Virus record (IMG/VR): IMGVR_UViG_3300036766_000194
Span: 186,001 to 250,000 of that record
Direction: 5' to 3' (one strand)
DNA length: 64,000 bases
Under the pieces are notes generated by a model. The model had not been told where the DNA came from. It did no database searches and saw nothing but the letters and a program-made list of their open reading frames with translations. The translations under genes and the position numbers were made by a program. How positions within the stretch are numbered: position 1 is the first letter of the stretch; every line of letters starts with the position of its first letter. Below, piece after piece: positions 38,780 to 54,046 of this stretch.

Positions 38780-38913
38780 ACCCTTATTCTACTGTCTCTA
38801 TTGTATTTAGGTTAATTTTGAAGATCATCTTGGTATATGGATACACAAAATCTCTTTGATGGAACTACGAACTAGATACCTTGTGAGCTTTGTTTTAGAG
38901 GGAATAATTTCTA

Positions 38914-45223: not shown

Positions 45224-45952
45224 TCACAACCCCGGCAGATCGTATATTCCCGCCGCAGACGCAGCCTTTATCCACCACTTTCCCTCAGGACTCTCCCAAC
45301 TAGGAAGAGAACAATCGTGAGGATAAAACTCCATTTCTCTCCCAGTAAACAAAACCCTAAAATCATTAGCTATGATCTCTCCCGGAGAAGAATGCCATTT
45401 ACCTCCGGTGTATTTCTTGGAATAATCTTCTATCCCTCGGAGCTTCATGTATTCTTCTTTTAATTTTTCTTGATGAGTATCCGGGTACCCCATTTTACGA
45501 GCAACATAATCAAATACCGCATGACCGTACTCGTGGGGAACCAGGTAGCGCGTCATAGCAGGCATGATAGGAATACGCTTCGCGGCCAAAATTATGGAAA
45601 GGGCTTGACCGTAGGACCTTATTACCTTCCCATCATAGCGATTGATTTCTTCGTCCCACTCAGATCCGTCTTCCTTGTTATAGACAGAGTCTTCAAAAGT
45701 ACACCCATTTATTCTATCAACAAAGTCATGAGACAAAATCCATATGCCAACTCTAGCATCTTTTAAGGGGAATACTTTTTCGCATTGTGTGGCTAGACTG
45801 TTGACGAGTCCTATGTCGTGGGCATAAGCAGGATAAGGATCGACCTTATTATTACGAGGATATGTACCCGCTCCGCATTGATATACGGGCGTGGTTTCTT
45901 GACTTCCTAGCGGCCAATGAAGATCTTCAGGGGTTAGTAGAGTAACTTGCAT
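45224..45952 (-). CDS. Putative zinc metallopeptidase
   Basis: HEYGH motif with downstream EIIANDF. Confidence 0.65.
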   Translation of the reverse strand: MQVTLLTPEDLHWPLGSQETTPVYQCGAGTYPRNNKVDPYPAYAHDIGLVNSLATQCEKVFPLKDARVGIWILSHDFVDRINGCTFEDSVYNKEDGSEWDEEINRYDGKVIRSYGQALSIILAAKRIPIMPAMTRYLVPHEYGHAVFDYVARKMGYPDTHQEKLKEEYMKLRGIEDYSKKYTGGKWHSSPGEIIANDFRVLFTGREMEFYPHDCSLPSWESPEGKWWIKAASAAGIYDLPGL

Positions 45953-45972: not shown

Positions 45973-46046
45973 TGGAGCACGGTGAGGGAATCGAACCCTC
46001 CTAGACGGTTTTGCAGACCGCCGCCTTCCCAATCGGCATACCGTGC
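45973..46046 (-). tRNA. tRNA-Cys(GCA)
   Basis: Cloverleaf; anticodon loop CT-GCA-AA; GGTTCGATTCC; encoded CCA. Confidence 0.95.
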
Positions 46047-46286
46047 TTAAAAATCGTTAACCGTTATCGGTTTTTGTATCCGAGTCTTACCGTTAATTCG
46101 GTCTGCCCAGAACTGTAAATTCTTTTCAAAATCTTTCCCTTTTTGAGGAAATATGTCCCAAAAAGCCATGTACGGATTATGGATGTCTTTTTCAAATCGG
46201 TCTTTCCCACAGAGCACGACCGCCGTGATCTTGTTAATGACCACGCCGCGCTCCCTTGCTTTCCGTATTCCGCCATCAAAGCTCAT
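46047..46286 (-). CDS. Hypothetical protein
   Basis: ATG overlaps the TGA of the upstream iscU-fragment ORF. Confidence 0.65.
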   Translation of the reverse strand: MSFDGGIRKARERGVVINKITAVVLCGKDRFEKDIHNPYMAFWDIFPQKGKDFEKNLQFWADRINGKTRIQKPITVNDF

Positions 46287-46453
46287 TTTATGCAAATCCC
46301 TCTGTTTTCTTCTAAAACGTAGAAATCAATATCGTCCGTCTTAGCCCAACGCCCTGCGTATCCGGTCATCTGCAACTTCATGACGTCGCCGCATTCCGGC
46401 GCACCCACCAGTCCCGTACCCACGTTGGGATCACTCTTGTCGAGTGAACCCAT
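46283..46453 (-). CDS. iscU: 56-aa chimeric ORF: IscU fragment (28 aa) fused to unrelated sequence
   Basis: MGSLDKSDPNVGTGLVGAPECGDVMKLQ then MTGYAGRWAKTDDIDFYVLEENRGICIK; hand-translated, below the ORF-track cutoff. Confidence 0.8.
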   Translation of the reverse strand: MGSLDKSDPNVGTGLVGAPECGDVMKLQMTGYAGRWAKTDDIDFYVLEENRGICIK

Positions 46454-46481
46454 ATCTCTATTCTACTGGAAGACAAGTATC

Positions 46482-46555
46482 TGGAGCTATCGGATGGAAT
46501 CGAACCATCACTTCGACTTTACCAAAGTCGAGAACTGCCACTATTCTACGATAGC
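46482..46555 (-). tRNA. tRNA-Thr(GGT)
   Basis: Cloverleaf; loop TT-GGT-AA; CCA. Confidence 0.93.
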
Positions 46556-46601
46556 ATTTTCAGGTATTTCTCCACTTTTTCTGCATTTGGATCCATAAAA
46601 C

Positions 46602-46675
46602 TGGAGCCTAGTGTCAGAATCGAACTGACATCCCCTGATTACGAAACAGGGATTCTGCCATTGAACCAACTAGGC
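46602..46675 (-). tRNA. tRNA-Thr(CGT)
   Basis: Cloverleaf; loop TT-CGT-AA; CCA. Confidence 0.9.
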
Positions 46676-46744
46676 AAATACCCCGAACGGTAATGTTTCT
46701 GAGAAATATCCTTTGAATCTCAAAAATATTACCGCCCGGTAACT

Positions 46745-46822
46745 TGGAGCTAACGGTGAGATTCGAACTCACGGGTTGCCTGTTTACAAGACAGGTGCGA
46801 TGGGCCACTCCGCCACGTTAGC
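46745..46822 (-). tRNA. tRNA-Thr(TGT)
   Basis: Cloverleaf; loop CT-TGT-AA; CCA. Confidence 0.93.
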
Positions 46823-46825
46823 AAA

Positions 46826-46900
46826 TGGTTCCCAGAACACGACTCGAACGTGTACAGCAAGTTCCAAAGACTTGCGTCCTACCGATTAGACGATCTGGGA
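46826..46900 (-). tRNA. tRNA-Gln(TTG)
   Basis: Cloverleaf, U1-A72; loop CT-TTG-GA; CCA. Confidence 0.93.
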
Positions 46901-47035
46901 GTAGAAAAACAAGCAGCGACTTCAAGATATTACGATTCAGTTGTGAGAGAAAAAGCCGCCGCGAACCGCTTACAGAGTGTAAGTTCGTTGGTACGTTCGT
47001 GTTCGGCGACAAGTGTTCATGGTGTTCTGTATATA

Positions 47036-47332
47036 TTATACCGTAGTTCTCTGAAAAAAGTTAATTAGCGATTTTCTTCTCTTTGCGCACTCCAGAGACC
47101 AACGCGGCGTCATAAAGAGGCCGCGAATCCAATCTTCCATCTCCTCATCCATAAAACTTCTCAATGGTACGATTTCTGAATGACCAATACCAAAGGTCAT
47201 GGCATGGGATTCAATTTCTTCTAAATAGCAACATTGGGCGGGGTTACGAGGGGCAATTGGTTTTTTATATTTCTCAGGAACAGGATGAGAAGACTTTGGC
47301 GGTCTATTTTTGATAAGAACCTCGCTACTCAT
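47036..47332 (-). CDS. Hypothetical protein
   Basis: ORF track. Confidence 0.55.
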   Translation of the reverse strand: MSSEVLIKNRPPKSSHPVPEKYKKPIAPRNPAQCCYLEEIESHAMTFGIGHSEIVPLRSFMDEEMEDWIRGLFMTPRWSLECAKRRKSLINFFQRTTV

Positions 47333-47347
47333 TTAAGGTTCTGGTAG

Positions 47348-48010
47348 CTACTCTTCTAAATCTAAGGTAGAATACTCCAGAGAGGCTGCGTGCGCAGCAG
47401 GCTCCCCAGCTAAAGCATTTGCTGCAGACTGTAAATCATTACGTCCTAGGACAAAACCGTGACGAAATAGCTCCCAAATGAACCCATTATTAGCGATAAA
47501 AAGTTCGTTGGGATGTTGGGGAGAAGAATAAGTTTCATACGGGATGTGAAAATTGTCAGTGGGCTTAGGAAACCGGACAATCATTGTCAATGCCCAACGT
47601 TTTGTATCGTCCCTTAGTATACTGACCCCGGAAGTTTCTTTAGTAATTTTATACCCGGTGGCGACTTCATAATCGGATTGAAATTTAGGATACTGCTTAG
47701 GAGGCATACTGGCGGATATAGAACATCCGTTATGGAGTAGGTAGTTTTCAAACTCACCACTAGGAAGAATGGTGACTTTCTTGTGACCTGGCCCCTTTTT
47801 CTTTTCTGGTAGAGGTTTTACCGCATGGTTGGAAGGTTGTAAAAATTGTTCCTTGAGTTTTTTGTCACCAAATTCAGACTTATCAAAACGAACGGTTACG
47901 ATGTCGCCATCTTGGGATACAACGGTTCCGGTACCAAATGCTGTACTAATAACGCCTTGTCCTGGTAGGTAGTCCATGTTAAGGGATGGAAAAGTAGATA
48001 TATATGGCAA
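47348..48010 (-). CDS. Protein with an N-terminal PcrA/UvrD-type Tudor-like domain (start possibly ATG 47977)
   Basis: GQGVISTAFGTGTVVSQDGDIVTVRFDKSEFGDKKL. Confidence 0.65.
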   Translation of the reverse strand: MPYISTFPSLNMDYLPGQGVISTAFGTGTVVSQDGDIVTVRFDKSEFGDKKLKEQFLQPSNHAVKPLPEKKKGPGHKKVTILPSGEFENYLLHNGCSISASMPPKQYPKFQSDYEVATGYKITKETSGVSILRDDTKRWALTMIVRFPKPTDNFHIPYETYSSPQHPNELFIANNGFIWELFRHGFVLGRNDLQSAANALAGEPAAHAASLEYSTLDLEE

Positions 48011-48062: not shown

Positions 48063-48290
48063 TTATGGACTGGAGGGAGATCCTTGTTCATTGTGTGAGG
48101 AATGCTGCGTGTTAGATATGTTGGAAATTGTGAAAAAATCTAAACAAATTTTGTAACGAATAGAATTTCGTAATTTTAGAGTTTTGCGAACGTGACAATT
48201 AGCACAATGCACATCACATAGAGCTATCTCTTCCAATAAGCTTTTTCGGCTTCCCAAGGTTAAAGAAGTTACATGTTGTTTTATCTAAAA
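48063..48290 (-). pseudogene. HNH-type endonuclease C-terminal remnant
   Basis: LLEEIALCDVHCANCHVRKT with no intact N-terminus. Confidence 0.55.
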
Positions 48291-48292
48291 CA

Positions 48293-48322
48293 AAAAGGTC
48301 CTAGATTTCTCTAGGACCTTTT
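48293..48322 (-). terminator. Terminator downstream of the tmRNA gene
   Basis: Perfect 12-bp stem AAAAGGTCCTAG/CTAGGACCTTTT plus T run. Confidence 0.9.
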
Positions 48323-48340
48323 CGTAGCCGTTATTTTATA

Positions 48341-48694
48341 GAGTGGACAAACTCCAGGCTGATGTTAAGCCGCCGCTGCCATCGCAAAGGTGGCTGTTGG
48401 CTGCATAGCAGCGAACGGCAGAACCTTGGATGTCATACGGGCAACAGTGTTTTTGACACTTATTGTCTGCGACCCGAATATCGTTCGGATTGCACCTACG
48501 GCGCGTAAGCAATTTCGATTCAGTCGGATCGGCGACTCCAGATCAGGCCCATAGAAAAACTTGGTGGACCTGCGGGGATTCGAACCCCGGTACGAAACGA
48601 CAACCAAAACGCCTTCTTCCCTTACGGGTATTTACGAGCGTCAATGTCTCAGCAACCAGACCGGGTAACGAACTTCTGTCCGGCACCAGTCGCT
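48341..48694 (-). ncRNA. ssrA: Two-piece (circularly permuted) tmRNA gene
   Basis: Minus strand order: T arm CGGGG-TTCGAAT-CCCCG, CAGGTCC-A-CCA (CCA end at 48562), 11-nt spacer, then GGGCCTGATCTGGAGTCG (starts 48550). The acceptor stem has G3-U70 and A73. A frame ending ...TFAMAAAA-TAA follows. Outer limits approximate. Confidence 0.9.
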
Positions 48695-53972: not shown

Positions 53973-54046
53973 TGGAACGCCCGACGAGACTTGTACCCGC
54001 AACCTTCCCTTTTGAAGAGGGCTGCTCTACATTGAGCTACGGGCGT
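53973..54046 (-). tRNA. tRNA with UCA anticodon (opal suppressor or Trp-like; atypical)
   Basis: 7-bp acceptor ACGCCCG/CGGGCGT, U73, CCA; loop CT-TCA-AA; short variable arm; T loop TACAAGT and a D loop with a single G are non-canonical. Confidence 0.7.

What the first reader, a model, noticed from the sequence alone, without database searches (positions are those of the whole stretch)
46283..46453. Host-type iscU fragment forming a new gene in the tRNA cluster
Seen: codons 1-28 (46453-46370, GC-rich) read MGSLDKSDPNVGTGLVGAPECGDVMKLQ. That is 20/28 identical to E. coli IscU residues 17-44 as I recall the sequence. They are fused to 28 unrelated codons, sit behind a class-2 promoter motif, and are coupled (ATGA) to the next gene. 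The piece holds only the first Fe-S ligand Cys and the GDVMK strand, which to my knowledge forms part of the IscS interface. Inference: a recent host-gene capture, possibly an IscS-binding mimic acting on Fe-S assembly or tRNA thiolation. It is also a host marker; I associate the GAPECGDVM variant with Acidobacteria, but this needs a search.
Basis: partly seen in the sequence, partly recalled or inferred. Interest (0 to 1): 0.75.

Follow-up and report, generated by a model that had tools for sequence, protein, structure and literature searches.

The report
Host iscU scrap heading a phage ORF
A 300-kb sediment phage carries a roughly 90-base scrap of a bacterial iron-sulfur scaffold gene (iscU) right behind one of its own promoters, where it forms the start of a 56-codon orphan gene; the scrap is real and hints at the host, but it most likely has no IscU-related function.

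Summary
ORF56 (46283-46453, minus strand) exists, and its first 29 codons are a genuine iscU piece covering residues 17-45. It matches E. coli IscU at 20/28 and acidobacterial IscU at 27/29. The best DNA identity is 87% over 85 nt. DNA homology runs from 46455 to 46366 and probably resumes for 19 nt after an 8-nt deletion.

The ATG lies exactly 6 nt after a phage-specific promoter (TARCY box, 15-16 nt, GTAGAATA). Thirteen genes in this genome share that leaderless layout. The stop overlaps (ATGA) the start of ORF79, a small gene conserved in a distant relative.

The chimera occurs in only one phage species (five samples, at least 99.4% identical), so nothing can be said about selection. No transcript evidence was found. 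No close donor was found, so "recent" capture is unproven.

The piece keeps only Cys37, Asp39 and three IscS-contact residues. Published IscU deletions of residues 1-12 and 1-17, and K103E, abolish IscS binding. Neither fold model gave it a confident fold.

Most likely this is a host DNA scrap captured at the 5' end of a leaderless transcription unit. It is tolerated, and perhaps useful only as a translated leader for ORF79. The IscS-mimic idea is unlikely (about 6%).

The parts
46482..46555 (-). tRNA-Thr (GGT) with encoded CCA; its 3' end supplies the promoter's upstream box
   Evidence: ARAGORN; Rfam tRNA 61.2 bits
46485..46489 (-). TAGCT, the upstream (-35-like) TARCY box, 23 nt before the G of GTAGAAT; it lies inside the acceptor-stem 3' strand and discriminator base of tRNA-Thr
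   Evidence: Of 104 GTAGAAT sites, the TARCY box lies at -22 in 25 and at -23 in 5, with 0.39 expected per offset
46459..46466 (-). GTAGAATA, the -10-like element of the phage-specific promoter
   Evidence: The 8-mer occurs 47 times against 14.5 expected; aligned sites are shown
46451..46453 (-). ATG start, exactly 6 nt after GTAGAAT (leaderless layout); it aligns with the Val17 codon (GTG/GTC) of iscU
   Evidence: ATG at +6 occurs at 13 sites against about 1.6 expected, and all open ORFs of 45-693 aa; alignment to donors
46366..46455 (-). DNA segment homologous to bacterial iscU codons 17-45 (Cys37, Asp39, the GDVMK strand)
   Evidence: blastn gives up to 87% over 85 nt, with every alignment ending within a few bases of 46366 (46360-46377); PDB and Pfam matches; contigs of co-occurring bacterial iscU lie only on this segment
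46347..46365 (-). Probable continuation of iscU (codons about 49-54) after an 8-nt deletion, now read out of frame
   Evidence: 16/19 identical and collinear with L016 and L025; position-restricted p about 0.01-0.03. A bacterial iscU in run X2 reads AGATCAAT followed by CCGGATACGCAG, 12/12 identical to the phage
46283..46346 (-). AT-rich 3' tail of ORF56 with no detectable relative
   Evidence: No match in the rest of iscU, in donor loci or in the phage's own genome; no match to the upstream gene of the distant relative
46283..46453 (-). ORF56, the chimeric 56-codon ORF
   Evidence: an identical product is called in four independent assemblies
46283..46286 (-). ATGA stop/start overlap between ORF56 and ORF79
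   Evidence: Read directly from the sequence; the same ATGAGC overlap precedes the ORF79 homolog in L217
46047..46286 (-). ORF79, a conserved small phage gene of unknown function
   Evidence: The exhaustive phmmer search finds P0228 (80 aa); pairwise comparison gives 37% identity, E 3e-15
45973..46046 (-). tRNA-Cys (GCA), starting directly after the ORF79 stop codon; probably on the same transcript

Best explanation
A roughly 90-120-nt scrap of a bacterial iscU gene (Acidobacteriota type, codons 17 to about 54) was captured by illegitimate recombination. It landed at the very 5' end of a small leaderless transcription unit inside the phage's tRNA region: promoter, upstream ORF, ATGA, ORF79, tRNA-Cys. 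The scrap begins at the promoter's ATG. An 8-nt deletion, or the junction itself, puts the frame onto the ATGA stop that overlaps ORF79. The unit is probably transcribed and ORF56 is probably translated. The 56-residue product is not an Fe-S scaffold and most likely does nothing IscU-related. It is tolerated passenger sequence whose only plausible use is as a translated leader that delivers ribosomes to the conserved ORF79.

Shown: the homology and its borders, the promoter class, the overlap, and the orphan status of ORF56 against the conservation of ORF79. Inferred: the capture mechanism, leaderless expression, the lack of IscU-type function, and the coupling role.
For: The iscU homology and its sharp borders come. 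High GC and GC3 (0.72, against a genome GC of 0.434) mark the piece as foreign. All eight sites that are rare among donors are G/C to A/T changes, as expected for drift towards phage composition. Homology seems to resume out of frame after an 8-nt deletion, which looks like decay rather than design. The promoter class is well supported: 30 full promoters, 12 of them leaderless including this one. ORF79 is conserved, and in the distant relative an unrelated gene fills the upstream slot with the same ATGAGC overlap. ORF56 has no relative beyond its IscU part. All copies belong to one phage species at 99.4% identity or more. Only Cys37 and Asp39 of the cluster site are present. Of the IscS contacts only Gly38, Val40 and Lys42 remain, and IscU lacking residues 1-12 or 1-17, or carrying K103E, does not bind IscS (PMC2854127). 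AlphaFold2 gives a mean pLDDT of 54, with residues 1-20 below 50.
Against: Seven of the eight donor-rare differences are synonymous, and the eighth creates the ATG. If all of them arose in the phage, that is unlikely under neutrality (P about 0.001-0.02) and would suggest constraint on the peptide. The test is confounded, however. The true donor is unknown, and a bacterial iscU (L157) carries three of these variants together. The placement on a leaderless promoter with an intact 56-codon frame ending exactly on ATGA is tidy for mere debris. No expression data exist either way.
Confidence: 0.6

Rival explanations
1. Decayed auxiliary gene. The phage once carried a complete iscU, as some phages do. 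Deletions then removed codons 1-16 and everything after about codon 54, leaving a remnant fused to a promoter.
For: Full-length iscU or NifU-like genes occur in phages (PHROG 8429; GenBank phages; at least 600 IMG/VR stretches; PMC5332604). The 8-nt deletion with out-of-frame continuation looks like pseudogene decay.
Against: There is no nucleotide homology to iscU codons 1-16 upstream, and the promoter abuts codon 17. No further NifU_N signal appears in any frame of the whole genome or in the tail. The viral iscU genes examined are more distant (at most 76-82% nt) than bacterial ones (87%). This history needs three deletions where one insertion would do.
Confidence: 0.15
2. ORF56 is a selected micro-protein that mimics the IscU surface, binds host IscS or another ISC partner, and diverts sulfur flow between Fe-S assembly and tRNA thiolation.
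For: It keeps Cys37, Asp39 and the beta-2 contact residues Gly38, Val40 and Lys42. It has a genuine promoter and an intact frame. The donor-rare changes are nearly all synonymous. The phage invests heavily in tRNAs.
Against: IscU lacking residues 1-12 or 1-17, and IscU K103E, lose IscS binding, and the piece lacks all of those elements. It has no confident fold. It is an orphan of one species. The phage has no partner genes for sulfur transfer. The synonymous-change argument is confounded by the unknown donor.
Confidence: 0.06
3. Assembly artefact. Reads from abundant bacterial iscU were spliced into the phage contig.
For: Bacterial iscU contigs pile up on 46366-46444 at 10-50 times the phage depth, and Logan contigs of the phage break inside the piece.
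Against: Four independent assemblies, made with different assemblers and from different samples, give the identical 171-nt ORF and the same flanks. Separate contigs bridge each junction with the phage-specific variants: X2 record 16 covers 46404-47400 and L086 covers 46402-45200.
Confidence: 0.01

Closest known systems
Bacterial IscU Fe-S scaffold (Pfam PF01592, NifU_N)
   Same: Residues 17-45 match at 69% (E. coli) to 93% (Acidobacteriota), including Cys37, Asp39 and the GDVMKLQ strand.
   Different: Only 29 of about 128-140 residues are present. Cys63, His105, Cys106, the LPPVK motif, the N-terminal IscS-binding segment and Lys103 are all missing. The piece is fused to 27 unrelated codons.
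Full-length phage-encoded IscU / NifU-like auxiliary metabolic genes (PHROG 8429; marine viral genomes in PMC5332604)
   Same: Both are host-derived Fe-S assembly sequence inside a phage genome.
   Different: Those are complete genes presumed to act as scaffolds. This is a fragment that cannot build a cluster, and it is closer to bacterial than to viral iscU at the DNA level.
Leaderless mRNAs, for example lambda cI transcribed from PRM (my own knowledge, not tested here)
   Same: The start codon lies at the expected transcription start, 6 nt after the -10-like element, with no room for a Shine-Dalgarno sequence. This genome has 13 such genes.
   Different: The promoter consensus (TARCY, 15-16 nt, GTAGAATA) is specific to this phage. 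Transcription start sites have not been mapped.
Gene remnants and captured host fragments in phage genomes (morons, pseudogenised auxiliary genes)
   Same: Foreign composition, truncation, a probable frameshifting deletion and restriction to one lineage.
   Different: Here the scrap begins exactly at a promoter's start codon and stays in an open frame coupled to a conserved gene, so it is probably expressed.

Membership tests
IscU / NifU_N scaffold (PF01592) | Significant sequence match to the family model | tested here: met
   23.9 bits against a cut-off of 22, covering only profile positions 17-42 of 127; PDB matches at E about 1e-9
IscU / NifU_N scaffold (PF01592) | All three cluster-ligand cysteines (Cys37, Cys63, Cys106 in E. 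coli numbering) plus Asp39 and His105 | tested here: not met
   Only Cys37 and Asp39 lie in the matched residues 17-45. No further NifU_N signal appears in any frame of the genome.
IscU / NifU_N scaffold (PF01592) | Complete alpha+beta domain of about 125 residues, including the N-terminal segment and Lys103 needed for IscS binding | tested here: not met
   29 residues only. Published deletions of residues 1-12 and 1-17, and K103E, abolish binding. The AlphaFold2 model has a mean pLDDT of 54.
Phage auxiliary metabolic gene iscU (PHROG 8429) | Full-length gene matching the family profile | tested here: not met
   E 0.044, covering profile positions 24-46 of 141 only
This phage's leaderless promoter class (TARCY, 15-16 nt, GTAGAATA, N5, ATG) | GTAGAAT with ATG exactly 6 nt downstream | tested here: met
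   This is one of 13 such sites, against about 1.6 expected
This phage's leaderless promoter class (TARCY, 15-16 nt, GTAGAATA, N5, ATG) | TARCY box 22-23 nt upstream of GTAGAAT | tested here: met
   TAGCT lies at -23. That spacing is shared by 5 promoters and -22 by 25, with 0.39 expected per offset.
This phage's leaderless promoter class (TARCY, 15-16 nt, GTAGAATA, N5, ATG) | Transcript 5' end at or next to the ATG | not testable with these tools
   The one sediment metatranscriptome that was laid shows only bacterial iscU RNA and nothing on the phage flanks.
Viral decoy or mimic of a host protein | Retains the binding interface and binds the host partner | tested here: inconclusive
   Three contact residues are kept (Gly38, Val40, Lys42); Tyr3, Tyr11, Lys59-Gly64 and Lys103 are absent. 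The complex prediction gave no verdict.
Viral decoy or mimic of a host protein | Conserved under purifying selection among related viruses | tested here: inconclusive
   The only copies are at least 99.4% identical, with 0 SNPs in ORF56 against about 1.4 expected. No relative of intermediate divergence was found.

The most novel reading that the evidence does not exclude
ORF56 is an expressed, selected micro-protein born from a captured host iscU hairpin. It uses the Cys37 loop and beta-2 strand to engage IscS, IscU itself or another ISC partner. That shifts sulfur flow between Fe-S assembly and tRNA thiolation in a phage that brings its own tRNA set. It would be a documented case of gene birth from a 90-nt host fragment placed on a leaderless promoter.
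Probability: 0.06. Interest if true: 0.75.

Novelty: new member of a known kind. Interest (0 to 1): 0.3.

Why it matters
The finding has three modest uses. It gives a sequence-based link, though a weak one, between an uncultivated 300-kb sediment phage and Acidobacteriota-like hosts, for which few phages are known. It is a clean, datable example of how a scrap of host coding DNA can land on a phage promoter and become an open, probably translated frame, which is raw material for new genes. It also exposes a well-defined promoter grammar in this phage, with leaderless and Shine-Dalgarno classes, that could guide annotation of its relatives. If the peptide did target the ISC machinery it would be a new kind of phage counter-measure, but the evidence points away from that.

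Tried and rejected
1. Complex prediction of ORF56 with the IscS encoded next to the closest acidobacterial iscU (L009:88-1311) returned no verdict (score 0.00). It is not evidence either way.

2. The six-frame HMM match extended upstream through a TAG to profile position 10. There is no nucleotide support for it, so it was rejected as alignment spill-over.

3. The purifying-selection test on donor-rare sites (7 synonymous, 1 creating the start; P about 0.001-0.02) was not accepted. The donor is unknown, and a bacterial gene (L157) carries GGT/GGA/GGT together.

4. The search for a near-identical donor failed. Nothing exceeds 87% over 85 nt.

5. Transcript evidence: 13 metatranscriptomes hold only about 5% of the words. 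The sediment run that was laid shows only bacterial iscU RNA.

6. The search for a variant lacking the insert found no joints in three DNA runs.

7. Synteny in relatives: ORF242 homologs at 59-66% identity lie in other neighbourhoods without tRNAs. Their whole records are not held. IMG/VR has no ORF79 or ORF242 relatives.

8. The tail and ORF79 have no paralog in the phage and no match in donor loci. The second GC-rich island, at the 5' end of ORF79, is simply that conserved gene.

9. The host check through the permuted tmRNA was inconclusive. Four of 101 Acidobacteriota genomes score above the cut-off (G099, G087, G060, G077).

10. An antisense or decoy-RNA role was considered. No promoter of either type on the plus strand points into the piece, and the piece is in sense orientation relative to iscU mRNA, so the idea was dropped.

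11. No sigma-70 consensus promoter lies upstream of ORF56. The phage-specific motif is the relevant one.

Full report
**What the window is.** The window is bases 186001-250000 of a complete 299,875-bp phage record with direct terminal repeats. The genome is 43.4% GC. The finding lies in a minus-strand tRNA cluster: tRNA-Gln, three tRNA-Thr, then ORF56, ORF79 and tRNA-Cys.

**Check of the observation.** The 56-codon ORF at 46283-46453 reads as reported.
- Its first 29 residues match IscU/ISCU chains in the PDB at E about 1e-9.
- It passes the Pfam NifU_N gathering score, 23.9 against 22 bits.
- It aligns to E. coli IscU residues 17-45 with 20/29 identities.
- It aligns to an acidobacterial IscU with 27/29 identities.
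- The stop codon overlaps the next gene's start as ATGA.

**Borders of the foreign piece.** At the DNA level, homology to 80 bacterial iscU genes runs from about 46455 to 46366. The best identity is 87% over 85 nt (L042 Bryobacteraceae, L009 Acidobacteriota). It stops abruptly after CAG ATG A.
- The upstream extension suggested by a six-frame HMM match through a TAG has no nucleotide support.
- Downstream, the next 19 nt (46365-46347) match iscU 16/19 if 8 nt are deleted. A position-restricted shuffle test gives p about 0.01-0.03.
- A bacterial iscU contig from one of the phage-bearing sediments reads AGATCAAT followed by CCGGATACGCAG. That is the missing octamer plus 12/12 identical bases.
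- So the "unrelated" tail probably starts with iscU DNA read out of frame. The remaining 64 nt are AT-rich and have no relative anywhere.
- The island 46336-46455 is 59% GC, in the top 0.7% of windows in this genome.

**Donor.** By protein, the best matches in one genome per species are overwhelmingly Acidobacteriota (Acidiferrales, Terriglobia, Bryobacteraceae). The PECGDVMK variant also occurs in Dormibacterota, Planctomycetota, Myxococcota and others.
- No closer gene was found in 401 more Acidobacteriota genomes.
- None was found in a metagenome scan for the phage's rare synonymous variants.
- None was found among 80 viral-contig iscU genes, whose best is 76% over 88 nt or 81.5% over 65 nt.

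**Promoter.** GTAGAATA is over-represented, with 47 copies against 14.5 expected.
- Of 104 GTAGAAT sites, 30 have a TARCY box at -22 (25 sites) or -23 (5 sites), against 0.39 expected per offset.
- ATG follows at exactly +6 in 13 sites, against about 1.6 expected. Each opens an ORF of 45-693 aa.
- There is no room for a Shine-Dalgarno sequence, so these are most likely leaderless mRNAs. This is an inference by analogy with known leaderless genes.
- ORF56 is one of the 13. Its TAGCT box is the 3' end of tRNA-Thr (GATAGCTCCA).
- Its ATG aligns with the iscU Val17 codon. Either GTG mutated to ATG, or the scrap joined directly behind a pre-existing start codon.
- No sigma-70 consensus is present.

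**Conservation.** The exact ORF56 is encoded in four independent assemblies, and a fifth contig ends inside it.
- All copies are at least 99.4% identical over kilobases. The absence of SNPs in 171 nt is not informative, since about 1.4 are expected.
- ORF56 has no relative beyond its IscU half among 5.8 billion proteins.
- ORF79 is a real conserved gene. An exhaustive search finds an 80-aa homolog with 37% identity and pairwise E of 3e-15. On its contig an unrelated gene occupies the upstream slot and ends in the same ATGAGC overlap.
- The coupled two-gene layout is therefore old, and the iscU-headed ORF is new and specific to this lineage.
- ORF242 downstream has over 100 relatives, but in other gene neighbourhoods without tRNAs.

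**Could the peptide work as IscU or as an IscS mimic?**
- It keeps Cys37 and Asp39 but lacks Cys63, His105, Cys106 and LPPVK.
- Shi et al. 2010 list the IscU contacts with IscS as Tyr3, Tyr11, Gly38, Val40, Lys42, Lys59-Gly64 and Lys103. They show that IscU lacking residues 1-12 or 1-17, and IscU K103E, do not bind IscS (PMC2854127). The phage piece starts at residue 17 and ends at 45.
- AlphaFold2 gives no confident fold: mean pLDDT is 54, and residues 1-20 are below 50.
- The phage has no cysteine desulfurase or MnmA-type gene and only one sub-threshold radical-SAM match.
- The complex prediction with an acidobacterial IscS gave no verdict and is not used as evidence.

**A point in favour of function, and why I discount it.** Eight positions carry a base that is rare among donors. 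All are G/C to A/T changes. Seven are synonymous and one creates the ATG.
- If all arose in the phage, this is unlikely under neutrality (P about 0.001-0.02).
- But the donor is unknown, and a bacterial iscU (L157) carries three of these variants together. They may simply be inherited.

**Expression and artefact checks.**
- A sediment metatranscriptome and three DNA runs show many bacterial iscU contigs lying only on 46366-46444, at 10-50 times the phage depth. None of the RNA contigs touches the phage flanks.
- Expression is therefore untested. The pile-up explains why short-k assemblies break inside the piece.
- Separate contigs bridge each junction, and four assemblies agree, so a chimeric assembly is excluded.

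**Verdict.** This is a real host-type iscU scrap sitting at the start codon of a leaderless phage promoter, forming an orphan ORF coupled to a conserved small gene. It is most likely incidental capture that is tolerated, and perhaps used only as a translated leader (confidence about 0.6). A decayed full-length auxiliary gene is the main rival (0.15). The IscS-mimic reading is unlikely (about 0.06). It is a new member of a known kind, namely host gene fragments in phage genomes. Interest is moderate to low.

Noticed in passing
window 48365-48626 (-); ARAGORN call 48274-48654: The phage encodes a tmRNA that matches the permuted (two-piece) Rfam model RF04321 at 51.6 bits (cut-off 47). Four of 101 sampled Acidobacteriota genomes also score above the cut-off, so it neither supports nor contradicts the host guess.
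   Followed up: partly
window 53973-54046 (-): ARAGORN calls a tRNA with a TCA anticodon as tRNA-SeC, and Rfam tRNA scores it at 54.8 bits. This may be a selenocysteine or opal-suppressor tRNA in a phage.
   Followed up: no
whole genome G000; in the window at 38792, 46466, 49623 and 53525 (-) and 47367 (+): The phage has its own promoter grammar: TARCY, 15-16 nt, GTAGAATA. There are 30 full sites. Twelve are leaderless (ATG at +6) and nine are followed by a GGAG/GAGG Shine-Dalgarno (often GGAGGAAC) about 16-20 nt downstream.
   Followed up: yes
window 45224-45952 (-): ORF242 carries an HEYGH motif, which looks like a zinc peptidase signature. It has more than 100 unnamed relatives (down to about 32% identity) on contigs up to 454 kb, plus one on a 6.3-Mb contig. 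No Pfam family matches.
   Followed up: partly
L213-L216 (relatives carrying ORF242 homologs): The related phages encode an InPase + RelA_SpoT protein next to the ORF242 homolog. One 454-kb contig (L215) has a ClpB-like AAA ATPase with Hom_end_hint/Hom_end hits, which suggests an intein.
   Followed up: no
window 46047-46286 (-), ORF79: ORF79 also matches repeated stretches in three large proteins: P0226 (857 aa, 10 stretches, with Prok-E2_B and Phi_1 Pfam hits), P0227 and P0229. It may be a free-standing copy of a repeat module.
   Followed up: partly
window 46456: One low-depth contig (depth 2.7) in run X3 lacks one base in the 6-nt spacer between GTAGAAT and the ATG. It is either a strain variant or a sequencing error.
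   Followed up: no
window 46366-46444; L086: Short-k (Logan) assemblies of the phage break inside the iscU piece because it shares 31-mers with abundant bacterial iscU in the same sediments. This is a practical warning for binning and for depth-based analysis at this site.
   Followed up: yes
L218-L297 (IMG/VR): At least 600 stretches in IMG/VR viral contigs encode full-length IscU-like proteins. One is on a 178.6-kb contig from the same sample as this phage (L263). Whether these are true phage genes or host flanks of prophages was not examined.
   Followed up: no
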